From Tubulanus polymorphus (taxonomy: Eukaryota > Animalia > Nemertea), in NCBI RefSeq assembly GCF_964204645.1, contig NC_134034.1, forward strand, positions 6,732,914 through 6,796,913: DNA of 64,000 bases, written 5' to 3'. The notes below the pieces were generated by a model that did not search any database, was not told where the DNA came from, and saw only the letters and a program-made list of their open reading frames with translations. The number at the start of each line of letters is the position of its first letter. Within the stretch, counting starts at the first letter, position 1. Shown piece after piece: positions 24,509-60,900 of the stretch. Position numbers and translations under genes: made by a program.

Positions 24509-24568
24509 AAGGACGACGACTGTTCCAAAGTTTGCCATATTGACGTGGCTCATTGTTATCTTTTCAGA

Positions 24569-26178
24569 ATGCAGGTTGTGCTCGTACTACTGGTTCTTTG
24601 GTTCGCCCAAGCTTATGGGTCCACGCCAGCTACAGTTTTGAGGCCGAACTACGGTGCGGCTTTTCACAGAATAGGTGGAGTGCATAACAGGGATAGTGCG
24701 TGGTTCCACACGTTTGCGATACCGTGGCTGGTAGTCGACGATTCCGTGTATTCCGTGGTCCTTATGCCGGTCCCAATAAACGCCACATCATATAACACTT
24801 CAATGATCGTGGGGACGCCCCCGTATTTTGGCGCGACCAGGGATGGTAACTATTATACAGAAATGGGCCATGATATCTTTTCCACTTGTCATGGTACTGA
24901 TGTGATGACTTGCCCGCAGCGCGTCTCCATGCGCGAAATTACCGTTGATTCGTGCCTAAGTAGTCTTTTCTTCGACAGGCCCTCGCGGGTGTTAGCGCTA
25001 TGTCACATAAGGTACGAGGTCGGGGGCCTCGCCGAACTAGCGGCTGATGTGGGCGACGGCTTTTTCCTCGTATCAGGCAGTGATGACTTTTGGACTCTCG
25101 CATGCCCCGGCAAGTCACCACAAGCGATTCCAGCATGTCGTTTTTGCTTAATTAAAATTGGTTGTGCATGTGCATTGCGGGGTTCAACGTTTTATGTCCC
25201 TGGTCGAATTAATAAATGCATAAAAAAGGACACTGTAACTATTGCACACGCTGTGAACCTTCCCGTCCTTCATAGTTTCTTCGGGAAAAATGCAGTTTCG
25301 AATGTTACTGGAGCGCCGATGTTCCAGGGTACACCATACGCATCGCTGCCTGTTTTGGATTTAAAACCAACAATTGGTCAAAGGTAGCGGCAGTTGATAC
25401 TAAATTTAGTATGGATTTTAAGAAACTGGCCCAAACTGTCAGTCAAGAGTCAAAACTTTACCGTTCCCAAGCCGATGCATTATTTGTATACCAGGAGCCA
25501 GTTATTTCAAATGGTGGTGGCACTGGTTGGATGACTTGGCTTGCAATAGGTCTATCCGCAGGTAGCATGTTACTGTCGATATTTGTTTTGTTGAAATCTC
25601 AAGGGTTAATACCAGTGTTGGGAGCAGGATTTCTTCCGCCCGCTCAAGCCATGGTCACAGTTCACCCCTCTATTCACGATTTACGTTCTGGAGGTTGGAA
25701 TAATTCAGTTATCAAGGAAGTGGTCATGGCTGAAAATATTCGGGTGGATGTTGTTCTGTTTTTGTTAATCGTAGTGGGAATTTTGATAATTGTTTTTCGA
25801 CCGTCGTTACGTGCTTTATTTTATAGATGCAGGCATTGGTTACCTGCAGCATGCTCGCCTGGTAAGTATCCAGTTAGATTGATGCTGCGAATTAAGAATG
25901 GAATACATAGTCTCGATTTACCTTTACTAACGCTGTCTGGATGTAAATCTGAATGTTATTTAGAGCCACCAGCTCTTACTAGAGTCGCCTTACAGGTCAC
26001 TTGTGGGGTTGCTCGATTGAATTTAACTTGGCACGAAAAACAAATGACCTGTTCACAAGGGACGGTTTATAATTTACCAAAATCATGCTCGGTGCCTCTG
26101 AAGATAAGTCTGTTTGAAATGAGGCAGATGTTATCGGTATCTAGTAAAGCAATCGTTAGGCTAATTATCGTTCGTTGA
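24569..26178 (+). pseudogene. env: Envelope-like glycoprotein (signal peptide, Cys-rich ectodomain, TM helices), frameshifted
   Basis: MQVVLVLLVLWFAQAYG signal, RPNYGAAF...WFHTFAIP, Cys-rich block, and TM segments in ORF 25411..26178. Position is downstream of pol. Confidence 0.72.
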
Positions 26179-28390: not shown

Positions 28391-28529
28391 TTTTGTAGAC
28401 GTGTACCAAGTTAGTGCAAATCAGATGGTTGTTATTTGAATTTTGTGGTGTCTTTTCGGAATTTATCAGTTGATAACTTACGTCGTCGCAAAAACTAACG
28501 TCGTCACAAAAATGGTTATTTCTAAATCC

Positions 28530-30759: not shown

Positions 30760-32336
30760 GGTCTAACCAAACTCCCGTCTACGAGTGAAAAGGTCTAAAG
30801 CTCGTCGCACTGAGCTTGCAAGATTGTTCGCAAAACGTTTTATACCATCTCTACCGTTAATATGCCGGTATTCGAAAAACGCCTAATGAAAAACACCGAA
30901 TCGGAAAACGCATAACGCCTAATTCATAGTAACATCCAAGAAATTGACCTAAATCCCTACGTGAACTATGTACGCAACGCTACATAGTTCACGTCGGAGT
31001 GCGTGGAGCGCCGCCCATTCCATCTTCGTTTCTACTGTCTTTGGTTACACAGGCTTATCTGTGTTATCATTTCATATTAAGACAGAGTATTATGATTATA
31101 AAAGACATCATATTTCTTATATGGAACATAAAGTTTATTATTTTTTGTTCAAGGAAGTTCAGGGGCTGGACATTATTTAGTCTCTCATTGGTTCGGTAGG
31201 TTCACATTAGCGTGGTTGTGAACAGTTTTGGAGGATAATTTTGAGAAAGGCTATTTTATCAGTCTTTGTGTGCGTTGTACCTACGAGCGTAGGTTGTACC
31301 ATAGTTATGCATTCCGGTTTCAAAATTCAAGAAAGCCGGTTTATAACCGCGGCGTTTGTTTTCGCGTTATCATAGAAGTGTAAACTGTTTCAGTTTACAC
31401 TTCTATGGCGTTATGTAATAATTGCTTGCACGGCGGACATTCTATCATCATCCTATAATGAAGTTTATTAGAGTAGTAGTCTCGTTTCGTGAAGCGTAAA
31501 ACACATGTATTTTCAAACTTTTCCGTTGATGAGTTGGATTGTGAGTCTCAGTAGATGGTGCAATTACGAAATTAGGTCATTTTCTAGGAATTAGGCGTTA
31601 TGCGTTTTCCGATTCGGTGTATTTCATTAGGCGTTTTTCGAGTACCGGTTAATATGCACCGGATCTCGGTAAAAGTGTTGACGATTGTTGAGGTTCTCGT
31701 GGCGGCATACGAAAGTGCTTTTGTCGAATTCCGCATGGCTTTCAATAGTCGCATTGAATATACGTGACTGTATGTCGTATCTGTTATGATCCAATCTATT
31801 CGGCACTAGCGATGTCACTAATTTAGTCTCCGGAAATTTGTTTTTGATTTCGTTGACAAGATCAATATAACGGTCCACACACTTATCGGCACTATTTGTT
31901 TTACGGATATCATTGGTCCCTATATGAAGGACATGACGGATTTTGACTGATATCCCTGACATCACTAGATGCTTCATTTACTGTGTACGCTGTTAGTTTT
32001 TCGACGTCACACGAATCGTTAACAAAGCGGTCAGGATTAATTCGTATAAGAATCACCTATGATAACTACTCGTCTACGCTCACGACGACTACGGGTGCTG
32101 CGGCTACGTTTGTCGCCATGGTGAGATGTTCGTCGACTTCGATTATGAACGACTTTGAATGTCGCATGACGAGCACTAGTTTCCGGACAGTCGTATACGC
32201 TTTCATCCCTGGGACTATCGGTAGTCAGTGAATTACGGTTAGAATGAGCATCCGGACTGCGCAACTCATTCAAGTTCTCTGTGTTCGATTTTTCACGCGA
32301 GACCCTTTCCAACAGGTCTTTCAACTCGTTTCTCAA
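30760..32336 (-). pseudogene. LINE ORF1 C-terminal SGNH esterase domain (split by MITE)
   Basis: RRVVIIGDS, VLHIGTNDI, then DPVHIN|GRDGIKRFANNL after removing the 30865-31648 insertion. Confidence 0.85.
30865..31648. mobile_element. MITE with ~60-bp TIRs and 8-bp TSD
   Basis: ccggtattcgaaaaacgcctaatgaaa... and its inverse at the right end. TSD TTAATATG at 30857-30864 and 31649-31656. Confidence 0.9.
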
Positions 32337-33002
32337 ATCATTGTCATCATTAGATTTCTGTAGAATGTCTTTTATCCTGCAGGCGTTCCTGTCGGCAACT
32401 TTTTTCAGGCGGTGACGCCCTTTTCCAAGTTCGGTAGCGGCATTGTCAGTTCAGAGATACGGTCGAATCGTATGATCGCGTCATCAATTTTAGTATGTAT
32501 GGATTTTAGTTTTTAGGTAGATTTTAGAGGAATCTGGACGCATTGGTTCACTTGTTGAGTTAAGGTGACTATGGAAGCTTGCAGTGACTTATACCATATA
32601 TCCAGATTCTCGGCACCATCTGTTATTGTAGAGCTGTAGTCAGTCTAGCAAGCAGCATTAGCAGAGAAGTCGCCGATATCGATAGACGTGCTGCCATCTC
32701 TAAATGACTTCATATCGGTAGGTTCGGAAGTTTGGGCGTCATCGGCTTTTTGAACCAGGTTCAGAGCCGTCGGAAGGGATTTCTCAGTGGTGAGGCTTAT
32801 TCCCGAATGGGGGGTGTGGGCCCTCCCCAGAAAAATTTTGAAAATTCAATCACCAGAGATGCATTTTTGGGCCATTTCACGGTCTCATTCACAGAAGCAC
32901 GAGAACTCGTGAGCAACCACCTAGTACAGATAACGACGAGCTGCTACGTGGTACATCGAGCTTTTGAAAAAGCATAACAAATTTTTTGGTTGAGCAAAAA
33001 AG

Positions 33003-36000
33003 CAGGGGCGGATCCAGGGGCATATTTTGACTGCCTTCTAAAAGAAATGAGGGCACCCAAAGGGGGAGCGCGGGGTAACCCCCCTCGCCGGTGGGGGTTT
33101 GTGGGGTCTCCCCCAAGAAAATTTTTAATTTTCAAGTCCTCAGATGCATTTTCCCAGCATCTAGGACATATTTTTCTCAATCCTCACAATCCAAAATAAA
33201 GCCTTAAACACTGATGTAAGCAAAGTCTCCAACCAAAAATCCAAAATGCAAAAAGACATATGTTCAAGATTTATATATATTTATTTTCAGTTTCATTTTC
33301 AGCATTTTTATGGTATGGTTACAACTTACATAATATTACAAGATTGCATAAAGTGAATATTTGTAATACATACTGGAAACAACATTTATGAAAATGGCAA
33401 TTTAAATATTTCCTTATTTAATATAGCATTTTGAGATAATTATCTCAATTATATTATTATATGAGTACATTGCACTAGGATCATGTTATATAATGTACAA
33501 TGTATCCATAAAATACTATTTTCAATACCGATTTATTGCTTAAATACATATTTGAACTTTATATTTTTCAGTTAAAACACACAGACTCTCATAAATTTCA
33601 AATGAGACATACCCAGATACCAACAAATTGCACCATATTTCCACTATTCTTCAGTTAGCTCACACATTGCAAATGAGACATTTTCCATTGATACAGCAGC
33701 AAATTAAACAATATTTACAATTATTTTACAGTTAAAAATGACAGAATCTCACACATTGCTAATGAGGCATTTATGAAAGAAAATAAAACTACTATATACA
33801 CTACAAAATAAACATTTATCTCATAAAGTTATCAATATCCAATGTTATTTTTATCAAAATAACTTTAATTTACTGATACTGAACTATATTATACTATATA
33901 ATAATACTGATTGATTCAGCTCTGAATTACAATGCTGAGTAAATCATTCCAGCAAATAAATTCCAAATAATACTTTTCATAATCTGACATAATCAACCAT
34001 ATATTTCAAAACATTTTACCACAAACAGCTATTAAAACTTGTAATTTCTGATATTTAACGGTTTATAATGTACACAAAACCACAAGCAATAAGAATAAAT
34101 TCACTAAAAAATTCCCATTAATACATATTTTGTCCTGACAGCAGTAAACCAGTCACAAAGGCAAACAACAATATCTGCTGAACACAAAACTCAATCACGT
34201 CATGAATACCAGTTCTAGTTTATTATATCTAGCAGCACCATCTTTCTAGGATGCTGACGGGCAAATATATCAATCACTGCCTGAATGTCAATTTTCAGGG
34301 AACTATAGACTGAAAGGAGAGCTAAGCCATTCATGCGGCTTTGATTCATGGTGCTTCGCAAATAAGTTTTGAGACGTCTCAGAAGTGAGACAGAGCGTTC
34401 ACACTCACATGATGTAACGGGCATAGTCCCCAGTAACACTAATGCTGCCCTGATATTAGGAAACAAATCAGCATCTACAATGGGTAGGAGTTGCGTAAGA
34501 TGTTTTGGAACTTCTTTCTTGCTTTCAGCTGTCTTTTTCCAGTAAGATTCCCAAAGATGCAGTTCAACATTCAAAGAACTAGGTGATGGCAGGTCATCAA
34601 TGTACTCCATACAGAATTCTTTGAATGGCTTCGCCCATTCTTTGTTAGCTAAAACCGTTGCTGGCAACACGGAGAATGCAGAAAGAATAGTTTCCTGACC
34701 ACTGAAAAAACGATCATTTATCTCGGAATACAAATGATCCAGTATTGGTATAGCAATAGCACGTTTGAAGTACTGTTCTACTGACTCAGCTGGGATGTTG
34801 CTTCGCTGAGTCTGACGACCACATGTTCGGGGTTTTTGAACGTCAACTTCAAGCAAACTGGCTAAAGCGGTAGCCTGTTGAAACCATAATAGGTCGTAGG
34901 AGTCGAGATTTGATCGATATTTCTCGATAGTATCACGGACAGCTTTTAAGCACAAATATGCACGATTGGAATCCTGGTTCGCGTACTACAACTTAACGGT
35001 CAGACTAGTCGTCACACTCAGACATTCACGTGTCAAGATATAAGCGGCAATGAACGGAAAATTGGTAATCGCATGGTAGAGCCCATTTGCTTTTACCACA
35101 GAATCTGGATTCCAATGCTTTTCTGCATTCATACTTATCAAATCCAGGGTTTCAACGACAGCCACCACTATATCCGAAAACACCTCCATTACATCTAGGC
35201 GTTGGACCCATCTAGTTTGACAAAGGTCCAACAGCTTTGAGCGCTTACTTTCAGGGCACAGTACCTTGATCTTTTCAGAGAGTGCACCTTGTCGTTTTGG
35301 GGAATTTGAAAAAAATCTCGACAACTCCCCCAAAGTGTCCATCATGTTTTTCACCTGTGCAACTGATGCAGTTTTCGTGACGCAGAGATTAAGACGATGA
35401 GATGCACAGTGTACATATTTCACTTTGCGATACTGTGTTTTAATGCGAGTTGACGCACCCTTACATACACCAGACATATTTCCAGCCCCGTCAAAACATT
35501 GTCCCCTACAATCTTTCATGTCAAGGCCAAGGCCTTCAACTGTTTCTATCAATAGTCGGGCTATTTCTTCCCCTGATGTACCAGAATCACACCAAATAAA
35601 CTGCAGGAAAGATTCGTGAACTTCACCATTCGAATCAACATATCTCAGAATGAGAGGCATCTGTTCTATGTTGCTGCAATCCGATGCCTCATCAGCTAAA
35701 ATTGAGAAGTAACGGTTCATTTTTATGTCATCTATAATTGTTTTTTGAATCCATTCTTTCAAACAGTCAATCAGTTCATTCTGAATGGTTTTAGAACGAT
35801 ATGTACTTGTTTTTGAACACTTTTTAAAATGTTCCGTCAGTGTTGCATCACCAGCATCGCATCGAAACTCCAATAACTTTTGGAAATTACCAGAATTACT
35901 TTCTAAATCCAGATGTTTCGAGTCATCACGGTGTCCACGCAATGGGATATTTTGATTCCCAAGAAATATGACAGTTTTCAAAATGGATTTCAGAATTTTG

Positions 36001-37876
36001 CGATTTTCAGCAATTCGTTTTTGATTTGTTGTACTCGTTAAATTGTTGACTCCCAAGGGTTTGGGATTCCATTACACTGAGAAACATTTTCTCACAGCAA
36101 ACTGCATCATGATGTACTTTAGAGTTATCCCTATGGGATGTAAATCTAGAACTTGCGCATGTCCAGTCAATAAAGGGAGTCGAAACTAAACGTTCTAACT
36201 TGGCATCGTGTTTTTTCTAATGTGCGACCAAAGAAAACACATGGTCGACAGAAAGCACCTGATAGTTCCTCGGAATATGCAAACCAATGGAATTGTTTGA
36301 GCCAATCAGCATTAAATGATCGGTTTTTTAAGCCATATATGTCCGTTTTGGGAAATTTATACTTTTCTGTCGGCACCCACAAGTTACATAAAGCATTGTA
36401 CTTTTCAGCATCTTTCATTGTCCTTGTTTTGCCAACTAACAATCCAATATCTGAAAACAAAACCACAGATAAAGTCAAATTCTGTACATGCACACATTCA
36501 AACAAGCAAAACAGAACTTACAAATATTCCTGGAAAGCTCCATAACACGCAATATTTGGCAACCATTCATTGGCCTATAAAAGTTATAACTTAATCCAGG
36601 GGCAGATTAAGGGGATACGCCGCAATCTTGCCAAAAATTTCTCCAAATGTTTCTTCAGAATAGATAATGGATCCCCCTGTTGACACATGCAGAGAATTAA
36701 ATAAGAAAATTATCGCATACAAACGTACCCATCATATTATTATTATTTGTGTCACGATTCTCATAGGCAGACATGATTTGATGATGATCATTCGATGAAA
36801 TCTGGGGTACCGGTACACTATCAGTTGGTACAATTACTGGAGTTTCAATCATCACTGCATTAGATGGTGGTGTAATTGATTCCCTGTCCATGATGTCAGA
36901 ACTGGATGTCGTGGTTGTTTCGACGATATCATGTGGATGGTCACCGGCTTCAGCACTCTCTGTGATGTCAGAACGGGATGTCGCAGTTGTTTCGACGATA
37001 TCATGCGGATGGTCACCAGTGGCAGCATTAGAGTGATTAACTGGTTCTGCTGAACGACCACTGAAAAATAGAAAAACAAGTTGCATAAATATTCATTTAA
37101 ATGTGCCCTTTTCTGACTTTACTACGCCAGGCCCAGGCTGCCCCCAGGATTAATGTTGCCTTTTAGCTGGAAAGTGCCCTTTTTATACTGAACTTGCCCC
37201 TAACAAGAGCTATGTATGTGCATATATTATCTTTGTGAATGCATGCAGCCCTAGACCTTTTAAGATGCCTCCGGGGGTGGATTCTTGAGTTTGACTCTTT
37301 GACTTTGACATTTGTTACGCTAGCCTTGAGGCCTATAAATTGCCTCTGTTTACGGCTGTTTGACCTAGAGACAGCTCATAAATCATAAACAGTGTTGTCA
37401 AACAAATGTTAAAGTTCTAACCTGAACAACGTAAATAAGGTTTTGCAGCGCTTTGCATCATCTTTTAGTAATTTTTCTCGGTCACGCTTTCTCCGTGCTG
37501 CCGATGGCATTTTTCATGTTGTGAATGATTCTCCACACAGGGCGCGATGCATTAACTATTACCGTAACTGCGGACATCGGCAACGGAAAACTGCCGACAT
37601 CGGCATCGGAAGTTTTGATAACGACTCTCAGTTCATGCGGGTTGTAATGTGCCGGCCTGGGGTTACAGATCGTTATCTCTAGTGCCCCCCCCCCCCACAC
37701 GAAAACTCATCGGAAAAGGTTCACTTCGAATCACGATTATAATCTATATGCTACTTTGCTATAGTAGATTTTTTTACTATCACTTAAAAATAAAAAATGC
37801 GTTCCTTTAAGAGGGGCACTCGGGATTTTTTGACTGCCTTCCGGAAGGCATGGAAGGCACCCTGGATCCGCCCCTG
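33003..37876 (-). mobile_element. hAT DNA transposon (ZMYM1/THAP12-like transposase), 17-bp TIRs, 5-bp TSD
   Basis: TIR CAGGGGCGGATCCAGGG at 33003 and inverse at 37860-37876, flanked by AAAAG on both sides. Subterminal TTTTGACTGCCTTC near both ends. Confidence 0.88.
34215..37510 (-). pseudogene. Spliced hAT transposase: exons 37510-37422, 37060-36729, 36450-34215, with frameshifts and a stop
   Basis: GT-AG introns with compatible phases. TTF-type zinc finger (WFAYS...AFCRPC), PLRGH, SKTIQNELI, ILADEASD, GQCFDGAGNMSG, VHCASHRLNL, TRW and hATC CERSVSLLRRLKTYLRSTM. Confidence 0.9.
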
Positions 37877-37912
37877 AAAAGTGCTCCGACGGCTCTACAG
37901 GTTAGACAGGTT

Positions 37913-38062
37913 ACATAGCGGGCAGATGTAGATCTCATGTATGTCGAACGATATCCGGGCCATGTCTTGTTTCTGGAGGCCAGTACATAGATTATGCATC
38001 CAACTTTCACACAAAGAGCATTGAACCAATTGTCTGTTATCTGGGTTTTGGCAAACGGTGCA
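37913..38062 (-). pseudogene. PHD finger of LINE ORF1 (not in the ORF track; alternative frame)
   Basis: CTVC-QNPDNRQLVQ-CSLC-ESWM-H-NL-C-TGL...IYI-CPLC, a C4HC3 pattern. Confidence 0.85.
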
Positions 38063-38456
38063 ACTAGACTTTTGAGGAAATTGTTTGTGTCCATTGTTTG
38101 TGTCTGAGGCGACTGGGGGTCTAACTGACTCTGTTTAGGTTTATTCAGTTTTTCCAACATTTTCGGGAAGGTGTCTCTCACCCGGAACGAGTTCCCTTGG
38201 ATATTCAGCTTGGGAGTCTTTTTCGTTGACCCTCTATACAAAGTTGTGTGAATGGTACCCAATTTGTTGTTCTGGCTGTCAGTATACATTCCAGAAAACT
38301 GAAGACCGTGATCTCCGCGGGCTATCGGATTACCATAGCTAGCACGGAGTACCTCGAGGATAGACTTCGCTTTTTCTTTGCATAGGTCTATTACCACTGA
38401 CTGTGGTTTCTCACTTATCGCAACCTTACGGTAACCTAGTTCATCATCAAATGAGT

Positions 38457-38732
38457 TCACGAAGTTCTGCTACTGGATCTCCTCTCAGATTTCTGGCCCT
38501 GCTGGAGTATATGGTCTCTCAGTTGGGTGTACGCAGAGTTCAGTTTCTGGAACGAGGTGGTGGCATCAGATCTGTTGAACTTATCGGGGTGTATTTCTTT
38601 AGCGATGGAGATGTATTTGGTCCTAACATCATCAAGGCTTGAAGGCAGCTCATCGAGTTCTAAGATTTTGAGGAGTTCCACGTTATTACTATATTTGATT
38701 TTATACGTGATACTGATGGAAAAGTTTCTCAC
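38457..38732 (-). pseudogene. J-domain (DnaJ/Hsp40-like, HPD motif) at the apparent N-terminus of LINE ORF1
   Basis: LLKILEL..SLDDVRTKYISIAKEIHPDK...ATTSFQKLNSAYTQLRD, with HPD at 38591-38583. Overlaps the next ORF (37807..38460) by a frameshift. Confidence 0.8.
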
Positions 38733-39475
38733 ATGAATTTACGACGATCGACGAATATTACAGACCAGAACGCTGCTCGGTTTTGTTATCTATCTATAGC
38801 ACATCACCTTTTCTGCCTACGTTGGGGTAAACAGCATTAAATTTCAATTTTCTCCGGACACGGTAAGTTTGTTGTGATCACAAGTGTGTATGACCTGTTG
38901 ACTGGAAGCCTCGAGTGTTTGTCAGAGATGACGTCAGAAACACACACCTGCTGACATAAACAATAACAGTTAGCACGTGCTGAAATTGCTGATTTCAAAG
39001 TGATATTTCTGAGTAGTGGCTGAACTAGAATTCAAACCAGTAGCATATTTGATAGTTGTGAATACATCACATTTGAAAATGACTTGTACACAATATTCTT
39101 TTTTGATGGCATTTGCTCTTTAATGAGCCACGTATTTCACAACGGAAGTGGATAATCCGCAAATAAATGCCAAGTGTGAACGCTTAGTACCATACTAAAA
39201 TCCTATTGTGAACGCAGCTTATAAAAGGTAGCACACCATTGGTGATTTGCTACATTCTGATTGTAAGAATTACAAAGATATTACCAATGCCACTTGATAT
39301 TGGGTCCACTGTGTGTATGGTAGTAAGAAGGTGATACAGCTGATCCGTTACTGCCCCGGTTACTGTAAAAATACTTATTCAATGACATTTATATCAAACC
39401 GCACCTAGGTGACAAGTCTTGTTTATTACCAAGAAAATCATATTTGTACATTCTCAATTATTGCATATTGTATCA

Positions 39476-54142: not shown

Positions 54143-54660
54143 ATCATAAGCTACAACTTTGCAATTGATTGTGGTTACAAAATACGTCTAGGTACCAATA
54201 TAATATGGAACTAGGGGTCCAGGGACACCAAATTATGCTTAGGTATCAATATAATATGTAAAACTTTTTTCTACCTATAAATGAGTACTGATGACACCAA
54301 GATAGCCGACAATCGCGTGATAATTGGCTGATCAAAAATACCTCTCTCCGGTATTGAAGATCCCTTTACATAGAATAGCAACAACAAATTTCAGTGGAAA
54401 GTACTTCGGTGGAAAAACTTTTTTCCACCTACGAATGATTACTGATGACACCAAGATGGCTGCCGATTGCATCATAATTGCCTGATCAAATATACCTAAT
54501 CTCAGGTACAAACGATCCCTTTCCAAAGAATACCAATCTCAAATTGCAATGAAAAATTACAATTTTGTTCAAAAATTGGTATTTACGAGGAATACGTTCG
54601 GACTCCCCATCAGGGCCCGGACTTGATTGGCTACCCTGACTGCCAATGTCCACTCGGTGG

Positions 54661-55977
54661 CTACTGGCTTGTCTTGGCTAGAGCGTCGGCCACCACATTC
54701 AGGCTGCCGGCCAGGTGGGATACCGAAAGAATCATCCCTTGAGCCTGGACCCAGGTCAGAATCTGAGCTGCTAAGTTGGATAATGTTGGGGACCTGGTCC
54801 CCCCCTGATTGAGCAAATAAGCCTTTACTGTGGAGTTGTCCGTTGACAGCCACACATGATGACCCCCTAACCTCCTTTTGAAGTGTTTGAAGGCCTTTTG
54901 AACCGCTAACAGTTCCAGGTGATTCATGTGGAGATGAGCTTCTGCTCGAGACCAGTTCCCGGCTTTCTGAAAACCTTCTACATGTGCTCCCCAGCCCTGA
55001 TGGCTGGCATCCGTGAATAGATGAATCGGGGCCTTCAATGGTGCTAGGGAGGTGCCTCTTGTCAAGTTCTGCGCGAGAGTCCACCACTCGAGGTCGGGGA
55101 TTAGGTTCACCGGTGGTACTGTCAATAAGGTATCCCACTCTTCCCCTGCCGATCTCCAAGCTTGCTTCCAGAATCTTTGAAGAGAACAGCTGTGTAAACG
55201 ACCGAGCGGAACTACGAGTGCAATGGAACTCATCTGGCCCAAAACCTGGGACCAGGACCGAGCCGATCTGGGGGCCCCCGTCAGGAGACCGAGAACTGCC
55301 TCCCTCAGCTTCTGAACTCTGGCCTGTGCTGGTCTGACTAAGGCCTGCGTCAGGTCGAAGTGCATACCTAGGTACGTGATCCTTTGAGAGGGGGTCAACT
55401 GGGACTTCTCTAAATTCACTATGAAACCTAATTGACGGATCAAGGCCAGTGTCTTGTCTAAGGCTTCCTTGCACTATGCTTTCGAATTTGCCACAACCAG
55501 CCAATCATCCAGGTAACAGAAAATGCGAACTCTTTTTGACTGAAGGTGTTTCTGAACCCTTTTGACAAGTTTGGTGTAGACCCAAGGGGCTGAACTCAGG
55601 CCGAAGGGCAGAGACCGAAATTGGTATGTTCTTCCCCTCCAATGAACTCTTAAATACTTTCTTGAGTTCCTGTGTATTGGTACTTGAAGGTATGCATCCT
55701 TCAGATCTATGGATGCTGCCCATTGGCCTGGCTCCAGCCCCTGAATCACCTCCTTGGGTGTTGTTAGCTTGAATTTTGGGGCTATGATATAATAACGATT
55801 TAGAGCTGACAGATCTATTACCGTCCTTAAGCCCCCAGATGATTTTGGGACGGTGAAAATTCGTGAATACCATCCCGGGGATCCTAGAGGGATTTCTTCC
55901 AGCGATCTTTTTAAAATCATCTCGTTGATCGCTGGCATAACGTGGGACTCCTGCCCCCACTTTGGCCTCATTTCCAC
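54661..55977 (-). pseudogene. DIRS RT-RNase H
   Basis: GWYSRIFTVPKSSGGLR, SIDLKDAY, LPFGLSSAP, YLDDWL, LFTDASHQGWGA, HMNHLELLAV, TDNSTV, QGGTRS, NVVADAL. Confidence 0.92.
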
Positions 55978-56085
55978 CGGCTGATGAGATAGATGCGGTT
56001 TGTGAACAAATTTCAGTCGGTATCCTTTGGAAACGATCTTTGTAGCCCAAGTGTCGCCAAATTTTTCTAGACTGGCCTGACATCT

Positions 56086-57935
56086 TCAACGGGTACCTGT
56101 GTTGGCGCGGCCACGAAAGGGTCGATTGAAGCCCCTACGTAATCTAGCCCTACCCCTTTGGGGATTGTCACTGTAAGAACTTTGAGAATAACTGACATAG
56201 TTCAAATTGTTATTGTTGTCGCTTTGAGCTCCCTTGGAGCTTGTCCAACCCGCTTTTTTGTAGCTTAATTTGCTGTTGACTTGAGATTGATTGTATCCGG
56301 GCTGATTTGCCGGTGAGTTTCTGTAAGTAGATTGGCCGGCGTAATAACTAGGCTTTTTTGGTGTCTTCCATGACTGCCTACCGGCCTTAGCCCGAGATTC
56401 TCTGATCTTGGTGGCCTCAGCATCGGCGGATGCGCAGCATCCAGAGAAAACCCGTGAGGAATTGCCCAGCGGTGCTCTGTATAGAGCTACTTTCACCGGT
56501 TCTGGAAGTTTGGAGTCGGCCAACAAGCTATATCTATTGATCAAGGCTAGGTTAGCCTGGATCCTTATACCCAAAGGCTGGATCCTTATACTCAAAGGTA
56601 CTTGGTGACACAACGCCTTGGCCATAGACTGTAGAATTCTCTCTATGGTCGCCACGTGTGCGGACATTGTCTCTGGATCCGGATTATCCTGGACTAGTTG
56701 AGACTTTACTTTTTCTAACTCGCCGTGCATGGCAACCAGTGAAATGTCTTGGAAAGACGCGATTTGACAAATGCTACGAGCTAATTGGTTCAACGCTCCC
56801 ATTGCTTGTTTTGGTAAAGTGTAGGTGGGCGGTGGTTTTTTGGGCGGTGGTTTTTTGGGTAGTCCTATCGTGGTTGACCCATCGGAGTCTAACTCAAAGT
56901 GTGGTTTGAATCCGGGATCATCAGCACCTGGTGTGGCGTAATAATAAGTCTTGTACCCCGATATGGGCGGATACATCGGAGAGAAAAATTTTGAATCCTT
57001 CATGCCTGCCTCTAATGGAGGATAAGACCAAGTATTGTCTGTACGCTTACCACCCCACAGTGTCGTGTCCAAAGTCTCACACCATTCTTCTCTATACGCA
57101 GAATGTGGTGCTAAAACTAACTCTTCGGTGTCATCAGATGGACTGAAGATTTTGGCGGCCGACCCTCTAGGCTGGGTTGGTTTAGGTTTGGCCTTGGTAC
57201 CTCTGTATCGGGAGAAAACTTCTTTTACTAAGTCCTTGAATGGAATGTCTCCTGTCTCTTCCATTGTGGATGGTGACGGAGAGCACGATCTGTGCATGTC
57301 TCCGTCCCTGGATAGACCAGTACTTCTGGATCACGAGATTTTTCCTCGTCAGAAAAATCGTTGACATCATCCAACACTAACCCATCTGTTGGGTTGCAGG
57401 ACAGCCCTGTTGGCACTGATGGAGGCTTGGGGCCCGGGGGTTCCTTACCTTTTAGTTGTTCCTTAAGGGAAGCGATCTCCTGCGAGAATATCGCTAGCAT
57501 ATTCTTGATGTCCCTAGAGTCAGACGGCTTATCAGCCGGTGATCTAGAACGTGAGCGACGACGTTGTTGCTTATTAGCACGCTTGCGCCTACGCCTGGTA
57601 GGTGACGGAGAATAGGTTCGACTTACTCTAGAACGGGACCTAGAACGAGACCTTGACCCAGAGCTGGGGTCAGACGGTGAACGACGTCGTTTTTTATTAG
57701 AGCGCTGGTGCCTACGTCTAGTAGGAGATGAAGAGTCGGACCGACTAAATCTCGATCGGGACCTGGACCTAGACACGGATCGTCCCGGATCATTGCCCTG
57801 TTTCCGAGTATCCAGGCATTCAGGTGTATCAACCTTGCCCGATGAGGACGCTGGGGTCTTAGAAGGTGTATCAACCTTGCCCCAACGTTTAAATCTCGGT
57901 CCCCTAGGGGAACTGGAGACGTCGTGATCCGACAT
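56086..57935 (-). pseudogene. DIRS gag-like ORF1 (RS-rich N-terminus), frameshifted
   Basis: ORFs 57228..57935 and 56086..57297 lie upstream of RT and are homologous to the first copy's YYATPGA...QANL...LRAPL pieces. Confidence 0.75.
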
Positions 57936-60900
57936 GTTAAACCCTAAAATAAGCTGAAATGAAGGGTTAATTATTGATACGATTTTTAGTACAGATTATT
58001 AATTTTCGTGAATGATGAGACGGAAATCAATTACGTTGAATGATAATTATTAAATATATAAGGCGGGAGGAGCCGCTAAGAAAACAGCACGGCGCTCCCG
58101 CGAAACCGGTGGCAAAATGTTGAAATGCGCATAGATTTAAAACGATCTCACCCGAGGTTCGACTTCTATTCCGAGATCAATCACTCTTATGTCTGTTTCT
58201 TATATCAATTAGAACGGATGTCCGATCCAACACGAAGAATTTTAACCGATTTACGAGCACTGCCGAAACACGTTCTCTAGAGAACAAGCGCCAAGCAAAA
58301 AGATGATGGCGTCTCGCCAGATGGCGCTATGTTACGGCGCCCCTACCTAAAGTCGATTCGGGCGTTATCTGCCTAGCCAAAAGCAATTTGGCTATAGTGT
58401 ATTTTCCCAGGGAATGTATTCGAAGTAAATATGGCCATCCATTAGGAAGCTACAGGACTCAGAATTCAGGCCCAAATTGACAATTTGGGCACAAAAAAGG
58501 TCACAGGACAGCCCTCTTGAGTCCGATCGACCCAATTTTTCTCATGCTGATGGGCCCTTGGGGGACACAAATATACACGAACGATCAAGGTAATTGATAA
58601 CAAGAAAGAAATTTAAAAAAGGGGTTGCTAACATGGTTGTACTGAAAGCTTGCTTGGTGGTTTTGCATTTCTGTAGTAGAATTAATCGAACTTTGAACTG
58701 ATTGCTTTTTAAAGAACTAAGAGATCGGTGTTGTCTTACATCGTTACATGAAATGTTATACCCGGGGACTGAGGATGGGAATGATTTTATTGTAGACGTG
58801 GACCAAGTTAGTGCAAGCTTTTGGATGGTTGTAATTTGAATATTGTAGTGTCCTAACGGAATCTATCATCATGTTGATAATTGCTAGATTACTTATTGGA
58901 TTGTGTTGAAATGATTTTGCTGTCATAGAAAAATTCGAGTGACTTCAGGTGAAAAGAAGCTAACACGAAAAGAGATAGGAGCCACGATTTTCTTTTTAAA
59001 ATAATAAAGAATTAAGCAAGAATAAGTTGCATTTCCTTCAAGGGCAATCTACTACGATCATCCGATAAAGTTTATTGCCACTATAGACTACTACTCCTGG
59101 CTCTTTGAAGAGACAGGGAACCAGTCTTCCTATTCAATTCAGAATTTATTTTACAGAAGAGCGGTTTTTAAGTTTCACATATCTAAACTGATAAATATAA
59201 ATGTTCATACAGAGATTTTTCAAATGGCCGCTATTGCAAGCACCCAATGAAAGTAAAAGAAAATTAAAAGAATTTTTCAAAAACAAATGTTTTATAGGGA
59301 ATCTTTCTTGTGTCAATAATGAACGAATTGAATTGTCGGCATCACTATGCCACATATGAATAATTCAAGACTGATCACGCAAACTCAACCAAGGTTGGTA
59401 TGCGCCGCTGAAATAACAAAAACGATTAAACAAAATCAAAAAAACAATGAAAATGACAACCGATATAGCCAATATAAGAAAGGGACCTTGATTTTATTAC
59501 TGCATTAAATGTATGTAAATATCAGAGCCCAAGAAAGTTTCTAACGAAAGTTATCGACTCCCCAAGCAAGTTATCAATCCGTGCGATAGCAATATGGGCT
59601 TGCAAGCATGTAAGCCCATGAAAATTTCTTCAAAATTTCCCACGAAAACTTCGAAAATGTGTAAAAAATGCTGATTTTGGCGAACATTTATGGCTGCCAG
59701 TTGGCCATCTTGAATCTGACAGGGCCAGTTTTTGGGCTGAAGATTTGTCTAGGGGAGATACATGTATAAACCAAATATCAAGAAATTACCTTGAAGCGTC
59801 TTCAAAACTTCCCAAAATAGGCCTAACTGGATTCCGTCTATGGACAGACGGACGACGGATGAACAGTGAATGCAATAGCCTGCTAGGACTGAAGTCCCAA
59901 GTGGGCTAATGAAAAATGGCAAACCAGTAGGAAGCTAGAGGACTCAGAATTCACAGGACGGCCATCTTAAGTCCGATCGACCCAATCATTCTTATGCTTA
60001 TGGGCTCTTGGGAAATACAAATACTTATGAACGATATTGATCAAATCGTCTTCATAATTTCCCTCGAAAATTTGAAATATGTGTAAAAAGTGCTTATTTT
60101 GGCGAACAACAATGGCTGCTGGTTGGTCATCTGGAATCTGACAGGGCCAATTTTTGGGTGAAGATGTGTCTAGGATAGATACACGTGTAACCCAAAAATA
60201 AAGCCATTATATTGAAGCGTCTTCAAAACTTACCAGAATAACTGGATTCGGATCTAGGGATGAACGGACGGACGCTTCTACGGACGACGGACGAAAAGTG
60301 AATGCAATAGTCCGCTGGGACTTAAGTCCCAAGTGGGCTTAAAAGGACACTTGCAGTCTTCTCTATCAATCCCAAAAGTAGAAGAGGGCACATTGTTACA
60401 AGACGAGGTAGATTATTTTCAACGAAAAGTAACACCATTCTTAGGATTTCATCATAATAACCCTGAAATACTTCTAAATGCAGTAAATTTTTCTAGAAAG
60501 CGCTTAGCATCAGACATCATTTAATGCATGGAAAATGCATCAAAAAGCAGTAAATTTTCAGTTTGTTTGCAGTAGATCATGCCCTACTTTGCTTTGGTGA
60601 CATTGACACTGTGGTGACCATATACTGAAACTAATGATCTTGATACTCACTACATTAATAGAACATGTCACCAGCTACAATTTTGCATACGGAATAATAT
60701 CATATGGAAATACTAGGTTATTGTACTATTCAATGCCCCTGGTGACCATATCCATGAAACAACAACCTTAAAACTCACCATAATCATAGAACATGTCACC
60801 AGCTACAATTCTGCCTACGATTGTGTTAACAAAATATGCCAAGTGACCAATATAATATGGAAATATTAAGTTATTCTACCATTCAACGAAAATTTTAAGA

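What the first reader, a model, noticed from the sequence alone, without database searches (positions are those of the whole stretch)
30760..38732. LINE ORF1 apparently headed by an Hsp70 co-chaperone J-domain: J - IQG domain - PHD - linker - SGNH esterase
Removing two insertions (30865-31648 and 32762-37897, each with one TSD copy) rejoins a collinear minus-strand ORF1. The order is a canonical J-domain with HPD (38457-38732), a TLYRGS...KLNIQG segment, a C4HC3 PHD finger (38062-37913) that continues in frame across the insertion site, and a GDS/GTND/DPVH esterase, followed directly by APE-RT ORF2. PHD and esterase domains are established in CR1/L2/RTE-X ORF1s. I know of no described J-domain there. 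By analogy with polyomavirus T-antigen J-domains, it could recruit Hsp70 for RNP assembly or remodelling. The J-domain joins the rest via a frameshift in this decayed copy, so the fusion is inferred.
Basis: partly seen in the sequence, partly recalled or inferred. Interest (0 to 1): 0.8.

Follow-up and report, generated by a model that had tools for sequence, protein, structure and literature searches.

The report
Jumping gene carries Hsp70 co-chaperone domain
A widespread family of invertebrate LINE retrotransposons begins its RNA-packaging protein with a J-domain, the module cells use to switch on Hsp70 chaperones, followed by a probable RNA/DNA-hybrid-binding domain; I found no paper describing either in a LINE.

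Summary
Confirmed and extended. The window holds a decayed LINE whose ORF1 is split by two DNA-transposon insertions and six frameshifts. A sister copy in the same genome has one uninterrupted 689-aa ORF1 (J-domain with HPD, 'IQG' domain, PHD, coiled coil, SGNH esterase) just before APE-RT ORF2, so the fusion is shown, not inferred. All 15 genomic loci with the IQG domain also carry the J-domain. They fall into at least six families with saturated synonymous sites, and J is conserved as well as the PHD and esterase. Searching with the IQG domain alone gave 93 distant relatives; 46 of 63 with a long enough N-terminus have an HPD J-domain. Amphioxus members keep a J-like fold without HPD. The IQG domain models as a TBP-like fold resembling the RNA/DNA-hybrid-binding N-domain of RNase H3. 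Best reading: an RTEX-like ORF1p that recruits host Hsp70 to its own ribonucleoprotein; this is untested, and this genome's families lack the basic helix-II residue 26. No paper reporting it was found; Repbase could not be checked. The scan's first stage noted the same architecture at other loci of this genome.

The parts
38691..38890 (-). LINE 5' UTR; the 5' boundary at 38890 is shared by three copies with different flanks. The ORF1 start codon is removed by a 22-bp deletion at about 38690
38511..38690 (-). J-domain (helices I-III; HPD at 38591-38583); first domain of ORF1p
   Evidence: Pfam DnaJ E=3.8e-9; AF2 model matches solved J-domains at Z about 8
38149..38424 (-). 'IQG' domain: TBP-like alpha/beta fold, probable homolog of the RNase H3 N-terminal RNA/DNA-hybrid-binding domain. 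Separated from J by a 1-bp deletion at 38460; the conserved Trp is lost in this copy by a 6-bp deletion at 38186
37913..38062 (-). C4HC3 PHD finger; frameshifted from the IQG domain by an 8-bp insertion at about 38103
   Evidence: Pfam PHD E=4.1e-6 in the intact copy
32762..37897 (.). Insertion 1: small terminal-inverted-repeat element with a 6-bp duplication; a hAT element (about 33003-37876; DUF4371 and hAT dimerisation domains) is nested inside it
32310..32625 (-). Conserved segment read as the coiled coil of ORF1p (approximate limits; broken by a stop and a frameshift)
   Evidence: weak coiled-coil Pfam hits
31649..32070 (-). SGNH esterase, main part (GDS, GTND, DPVH); two frameshifts
   Evidence: Pfam Lipase_GDSL_2 E=7.4e-8
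30865..31648 (.). Insertion 2: 784-bp non-autonomous element with 68-bp terminal inverted repeats and an 8-bp duplication
30763..30864 (-). End of the esterase and ORF1 stop codon
28511..30734 (-). ORF2: APE endonuclease and the first part of the reverse transcriptase; decayed, and similarity to the sisters ends at 28511
   Evidence: Pfam Exo_endo_phos hits; 87% nt identity to sister ORF2

Best explanation
A decayed copy of an RTEX-like LINE whose ORF1 protein is J-domain, TBP-like domain, PHD, coiled coil, SGNH esterase (shown). The J-domain is an old part of the element kept by purifying selection (shown). Most likely it is a working Hsp70 co-chaperone module (inferred): ORF1p multimerises through the coiled coil on its own RNA, and the J-domains make host Hsc70 hydrolyse ATP and clamp on a protein of that same particle, ORF1p itself or the newly made ORF2p, so that the RNP is assembled, kept soluble or taken apart. 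The neighbouring TBP-like domain probably binds nucleic acid, most likely RNA/DNA hybrid (inferred), which would place the chaperone step at the target-primed reverse transcription intermediate (speculative).
For: Single open ORF1 in sister copies. J at 15/15 IQG loci. Between six families pS is saturated (mostly 0.7-0.95) while pN in J is 0.29-0.40, like PHD and esterase and below most linker values. Search seeded only with IQG: 56 of 92 hits have Pfam DnaJ, 46 of 63 long enough have HPD. In those, DnaJ positions Y/F25, R/K26 (39/45), A29, HPD, K/R36 and the helix III Phe motif (40/45) are kept; these are residues needed for Hsp70 stimulation (PMC1906734). J-ORF1s sit before APE/RT ORFs in unrelated samples. 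IQG fold: RNase H3 N-domain Z 7.8, rmsd 2.2 A over 69 residues; weak Pfam DUF3378 and RnlA hits on the same hairpin; Tyr, Ser/Thr at +2 and Gln at +9 match RNase H3 Tyr43, Ser45 and Gly52/Gln54. A related LINE lineage in this genome has an RNase H1-type hybrid-binding domain before its PHD.
Against: No biochemical test and no RNA data. All six families of this genome have Ile/Leu at DnaJ position 26 and a less basic helix II (net +1 in five of six, against a median of +3); position 26 is needed in most J-domains tested. HPD is lost in amphioxus members and in a second group, apparently separately, while a J-like N-terminus stays, so stimulation of Hsp70 is not essential in every lineage. The fold match of the IQG domain is of middling Z, a CYTH protein scores higher (Z 8.7), and no sequence search reached significance.
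Confidence: 0.6

Rival explanations
1. The J-domain is a real part of ORF1p but works without Hsp70, as a helical protein- or RNA-binding hairpin or dimerisation surface.
For: HPD-less J-like domains in amphioxus and a second group; loss of the basic residue 26 in all families of this genome.
Against: HPD is invariant in six families with saturated synonymous sites and in 46 distant relatives; a loop motif kept that way is hard to explain without Hsp70.
Confidence: 0.17
2. Counter-defence: the J-domain aims Hsp70 at a host complex, not at the element's own particle, as polyomavirus T antigen does with Rb-E2F; the PHD would guide it to chromatin or silencing complexes, or it competes for the chaperones that load piRNA machinery.
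For: Analogy only (own knowledge of T antigen). J-proteins act with Hsp70 in plant TE silencing (SILENZIO; PMC8616336). The PHD lies next to the J-IQG module.
Against: No Rb-binding or other host-targeting motif was identified; the J-domain is tied to a probable nucleic-acid-binding domain in almost every member.
Confidence: 0.2
3. The J segment is a host DnaJ fragment lying next to, or recently captured by, this LINE copy.
For: The window copy has a frameshift between J and the rest; an intron-containing J+IQG gene exists in the salmon louse.
Against: Intact single ORFs, shared 5' boundary, 15/15 loci, conservation across families and species.
Confidence: 0.01

Closest known systems
RTEX-clade non-LTR retrotransposons (esterase-type ORF1p; RTEX-n_BF, RTEX-n_NV, RTEX-1_SK in PMC3905857)
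   Same: Long ORF1 with coiled coil before a C-terminal SGNH esterase (start at aa 469-550 in most amphioxus elements; about 515 here); APE-RT ORF2; RT 49% identical to a Branchiostoma belcheri element with the same ORF1 plan.
   Different: The N-terminal 260-350 aa are left unannotated in that paper, which states that esterase ORF1ps lack structured RNA-binding domains. Here they hold a J-domain, a TBP-like domain and a PHD.
CR1/L2 ORF1 types III and IV (PHD; esterase), PMC4120745
   Same: PHD, coiled coil and esterase modules shuffled in ORF1.
   Different: No J-domain or TBP-like domain among the listed types; that survey does not cover RTEX.
Polyomavirus T-antigen J-domain (class C J-proteins of mobile elements)
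   Same: N-terminal HPD J-domain on a multidomain, multimeric protein of a mobile element; 1faf matches the model at Z 6.9.
   Different: No sign of common descent beyond the J fold; retrotransposon, not DNA virus; client unknown.
RNase H3 N-domain (Pfam DUF3378, TBP-like) and RnlA N-terminal domain
   Same: Three-stranded sheet with two helices; Tyr / Ser-Thr / Gln-Gly hairpin with the spacing of the hybrid-contacting residues.
   Different: Extra N-terminal strand, no RNase H catalytic domain, 17% identity, no significant sequence match.

Membership tests
J-domain proteins (Hsp70 co-chaperones) | Pfam DnaJ above the curated cut-off | tested here: met
   37 bits (window) and 34.7 bits (intact copy) against 27.8
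J-domain proteins (Hsp70 co-chaperones) | HPD motif between helices II and III | tested here: met
   Invariant in this genome's families; AF2 helices 27-41 and 51-74 flank it
J-domain proteins (Hsp70 co-chaperones) | Basic helix II with Arg/Lys at position 26 | tested here: inconclusive
   Ile/Leu in all six families of this genome, with Arg22 and Lys/Arg30 kept; Arg/Lys in 39 of 45 relatives
J-domain proteins (Hsp70 co-chaperones) | Stimulates Hsp70 ATPase | not testable with these tools
   Needs biochemistry
Non-LTR retrotransposon (LINE) with APE endonuclease | ORF1 followed by APE-RT ORF2, no LTRs, 3' tail | tested here: met
   sisters end in a poly(A) signal and short TTGAA-type repeats
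RTEX clade | RT clusters with reference RTEX elements | not testable with these tools
   No labelled Repbase references available; homolog search returned no clade names. Indirect: 49% RT identity to an amphioxus element whose esterase resembles the RTEX_BF rows of PMC3905857 Fig. S1 (machine-read text)
RTEX clade | ORF1 with coiled coil and SGNH esterase | tested here: met
SGNH esterase | Ser (GDS), Asn (GxND), Asp-x-x-His kept | tested here: met
   All three motifs present in six own-genome ORF1s
RNase H3 N-domain / TBP-like hybrid-binding domain | Fold | tested here: met
   3vn5 Z 7.8, 4py5 Z 6.7, 2d0a Z 5.8; atlas TM 0.61 to an RNase HIII cluster; other folds score alike
RNase H3 N-domain / TBP-like hybrid-binding domain | Significant sequence homology | tested here: inconclusive
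   Only weak Pfam hits: RnlA_toxin in 6 of 79 (best 1.9e-4), DUF3378 in 4 of 79 (best 0.012), all below cut-off; nothing in PDB by profile
RNase H3 N-domain / TBP-like hybrid-binding domain | Binds RNA/DNA hybrid selectively | not testable with these tools
   Needs a band-shift assay

The most novel reading that the evidence does not exclude
These LINEs encode their own Hsp70-activating, hybrid-sensing module: the TBP-like domain finds the RNA/cDNA hybrid made during target-primed reverse transcription and the adjacent J-domain calls Hsc70 to strip or remodel the ORF1p coat there. It would be the first retrotransposon-encoded co-chaperone and a direct handle on how ORF1p leaves the RNA for reverse transcription; the module has also moved between distant LINE clades and possibly into a host gene.
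Probability: 0.25. Interest if true: 0.92.

Novelty: new variant of a known kind. Interest (0 to 1): 0.75.

Why it matters
How ORF1p particles assemble and then release their RNA to the reverse transcriptase is an open question for all LINEs, and esterase-type ORF1ps were described as lacking any structured nucleic-acid-binding domain (PMC3905857). An element-encoded J-domain makes chaperone involvement testable with one HPD-to-QPD change, with natural HPD-less lineages as controls. A probable hybrid-binding domain, paralleled by an RNase H1-type one in a related lineage, suggests that ORF1p acts on the reverse-transcription intermediate. It also means some proteins annotated as DnaJ in invertebrate genomes and metagenomes are retrotransposon ORF1s.

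Tried and rejected
Word-index protein searches with the N-terminal region and with a full-length alignment found nothing; these are false negatives, since the HMMER scan found 93 relatives. The RT search gave no clade labels. The Atlas feature search, Foldseek and the PDB profile search gave no clear match for the IQG domain. No RNA run holds the element, so expression is untested. Literature searches for a J/DnaJ domain in LINE ORF1 found no relevant paper; a survey of 280,000 J-proteins does not mention transposons or GDSL in its main text. Two classification papers were not held and Repbase entries could not be read. dN/dS as a ratio was not computed because synonymous sites are saturated. 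Rejected: chance neighbour; processed host DnaJ fragment; ORF start at 38732.
Full report
What is in the window. The region is a minus-strand LINE running from 38890 to 28511 in a repeat-rich genome of 268 Mb. The segment 38460-38738 hits Pfam DnaJ above its cut-off (E=3.8e-9), 31630-31977 hits the GDSL/SGNH family, and APE endonuclease fragments follow. Two other copies, 87-88% identical, lie on other contigs. The duplications are 6 bp and 8 bp; the larger insertion is a small inverted-repeat element with a hAT transposon nested in it. The window ORF1 is more broken than stated: six frameshifting indels, one of which (22 bp at about 38690) removes the start codon, and two stops.

The fusion is real. 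The C3 sister has a single 689-aa ORF (about 671 aa from the Met that is conserved across families) with DnaJ at 34-86, PHD at 238-287 and esterase at 558-660 by Pfam, directly followed by ORF2. All three copies share one 5' boundary about 200 nt upstream of J, with unrelated flanks. Searches of the genome with J and with the IQG domain return the same loci: 15 IQG loci, each with a J-domain in front. Several have J to esterase in one frame (722, 722, 629 aa stop to stop) and most fetched loci show APE-RT behind. They form at least six families, 46-53% identical to the intact copy over J+IQG. Between families synonymous sites are saturated, while non-synonymous difference in J is 0.29-0.40, the same as in the PHD and esterase and below most linker values (0.4-0.7). 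The J-domain has therefore been under purifying selection as part of active elements.

It is widespread. A profile of the IQG domain alone, with no J residues, found 93 clusters among 1.84 billion representatives. Of 92 examined, 56 hit Pfam DnaJ, 22 the esterase and 13 the PHD; 46 of 63 with at least 70 residues upstream have HPD there. Six contigs from five unrelated samples show J-esterase ORF1; in five a long APE/RT ORF follows and the sixth has only fragments downstream. Most hosts are unnamed. Named ones are Branchiostoma belcheri, whose members keep a J-like N-terminus (Pfam DnaJ on record) but have lost HPD, and the salmon louse. A tree of the IQG domain is poorly resolved, but it places the amphioxus HPD-less group with an HPD-bearing sequence (96/82) and a second HPD-less group apart, which fits HPD being ancestral and lost more than once. 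One element has J+IQG joined to C2H2- and CCCH-like fingers instead of PHD-esterase, in front of an RT only 23% identical to this one, so the module probably occurs in a second LINE clade; its IQG match is weak (E=2.9e-4). The salmon louse gene spans 2.6 kb for 302 aa, with no RT in 6 kb either side: either a domesticated copy or a relative of the donor.

Is the J-domain functional? AlphaFold gives a confident J fold that matches solved J-domains at Z 7-8.5. In the 45 HPD-bearing relatives helix II is canonical, with Arg/Lys at DnaJ position 26 in 39 and the helix III Phe motif in 40. Tyr25, Arg/Lys26, HPD, Phe47 and Leu57 are the residues whose loss disables J-domains (PMC1906734). The six families of this genome keep Arg22, Tyr25, Ala29, HPD, Lys/Arg36 and Phe47 but have Ile or Leu at 26. 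That is the main sequence argument against normal activity in the window's own lineage, and the HPD-less lineages show the activity can be dropped.

The IQG domain. A model from a 79-sequence alignment (pLDDT 88.5) matches the N-domain of RNase H3 along that whole domain (3vn5 residues 2-70, Z 7.8, rmsd 2.2 A, 17% identity, the highest identity in the list); two more RNase H3 structures and the RnlA homolog LsoA also appear. A CYTH protein scores higher (Z 8.7) and KA1 and KH domains appear too, so the fold match alone is not decisive. Independent hints point the same way. The only recurrent Pfam hits of the 79 members are RnlA_toxin and DUF3378, both weak, and they fall on the conserved hairpin. 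That hairpin has a near-invariant Tyr (73/79), Ser/Thr two residues on (62/79) and Gln (77/79), nine residues after the Tyr in 51/79; in RNase H3 the hybrid is contacted by Tyr43, Ser45 and Gly52 (Gln54 in the Bacillus enzyme) (PMC4132731). The residue match rests on spacing, not on a structural alignment. Following a lead from the scan's notes (s1-511908), I found RNase H1-type hybrid-binding domains at five places 4-5 kb upstream of RTs 38-40% identical to this clade's RT; one was read and has that domain, then a PHD-like finger and a coiled-coil-like stretch. Two unrelated hybrid-binding modules at the same place in related ORF1s would support the function. I put homology to the RNase H3 N-domain at about 65%.

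Mechanism. Shown: domain order, single ORF, selection, wide spread. From established knowledge: J-domains act by stimulating Hsp70 ATPase next to a client; esterase ORF1ps multimerise through the coiled coil and bind membranes (PMC3905857). Inferred: the client is the element's own RNP, and Hsc70 is used to assemble it, keep it soluble or uncoat it, or to activate ORF2p in cis (0.6 in all). Rivals are a host-directed, T-antigen-like use (0.2) and an Hsp70-independent role (0.17).

Comparison and novelty. The element looks like RTEX: esterase ORF1 of the right size, RT 49% identical to an amphioxus element, C-terminal CCHC finger in ORF2 of several members. Clade membership could not be tested against labelled references. 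Esterase, PHD and coiled coil in ORF1 are known (PMC3905857, PMC4120745). Seven literature searches found no J-domain in any LINE ORF1, and the ORF1 surveys read do not mention one. The library lacks most subscription papers and Repbase, where a DnaJ note on RTEX entries could exist, since Pfam sees the domain easily. The scan's first stage noted the same architecture at two other loci of this genome; these are unchecked notes, not independent support. Verdict: a real, apparently undescribed variant of LINE ORF1p with two new domains and a one-mutation test; interest 0.75.

Noticed in passing
G000 C5:20015940, C7:3333289, C8:8716425, C1:11704340, C1:18420134; L059:1-1701(-): A related LINE lineage whose ORF1 starts with an RNase H1-type hybrid-binding domain (Pfam Cauli_VI), followed in the copy read by a PHD-like finger and coiled-coil-like stretch; RT matches lie 4-5 kb downstream on the same strand.
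   Followed up: partly
L052:177-5611: LINE with J + IQG + C2H2- and CCCH-like fingers in ORF1 and an intact 1168-aa ORF2 whose RT is only 23% identical to this clade; clade not identified.
   Followed up: partly
L054:6001-8579 (Lepeophtheirus salmonis, annotated DNAJA2): Intron-containing gene with J + IQG domains and no RT nearby; related proteins P0080 and P0089. Possible domesticated ORF1 or relative of the donor gene.
   Followed up: partly
L050 (Branchiostoma belcheri) and P0063, P0064, P0079, P0085: ORF1s with a J-like N-terminus lacking HPD; L050 has an open 1188-aa ORF2 frame. Natural controls for HPD function.
   Followed up: partly
window:32762-37897: Small inverted-repeat element with a 6-bp, not 8-bp, duplication, carrying a nested hAT with a nearly complete transposase (34218-36517).
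   Followed up: partly
window:800-17200: AT-rich gene cluster that reads like a Polinton/adintovirus-type element (by eye: packaging-ATPase-, integrase- and DNA-polymerase-like frames). Observed only.
   Followed up: no
window:17636-26645: Gypsy-like LTR element with 247-bp LTRs 97% identical and an extra env-like frame at 24509-26175. Observed only.
   Followed up: no
window:27206-27640: Second, unrelated SGNH esterase remnant (Pfam E=0.049) just beyond the truncated LINE; probably another decayed retroelement.
   Followed up: no
window:39479-40618: Host chondroitin synthase (CHGN) exon on the minus strand, ending about 590 bp upstream of the LINE 5' end.
   Followed up: no
L038 (G000 C6:13.515-13.525 Mb): A J-ORF1 copy stops within the esterase next to Polinton-like genes; a matching RT lies about 20 kb further on (C6:13502619), so the LINE is probably split by that element.
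   Followed up: no
window:42400-46900 and 54500-58000: Two decayed elements whose RT-like frames read like DIRS retrotransposons (by eye).
   Followed up: no
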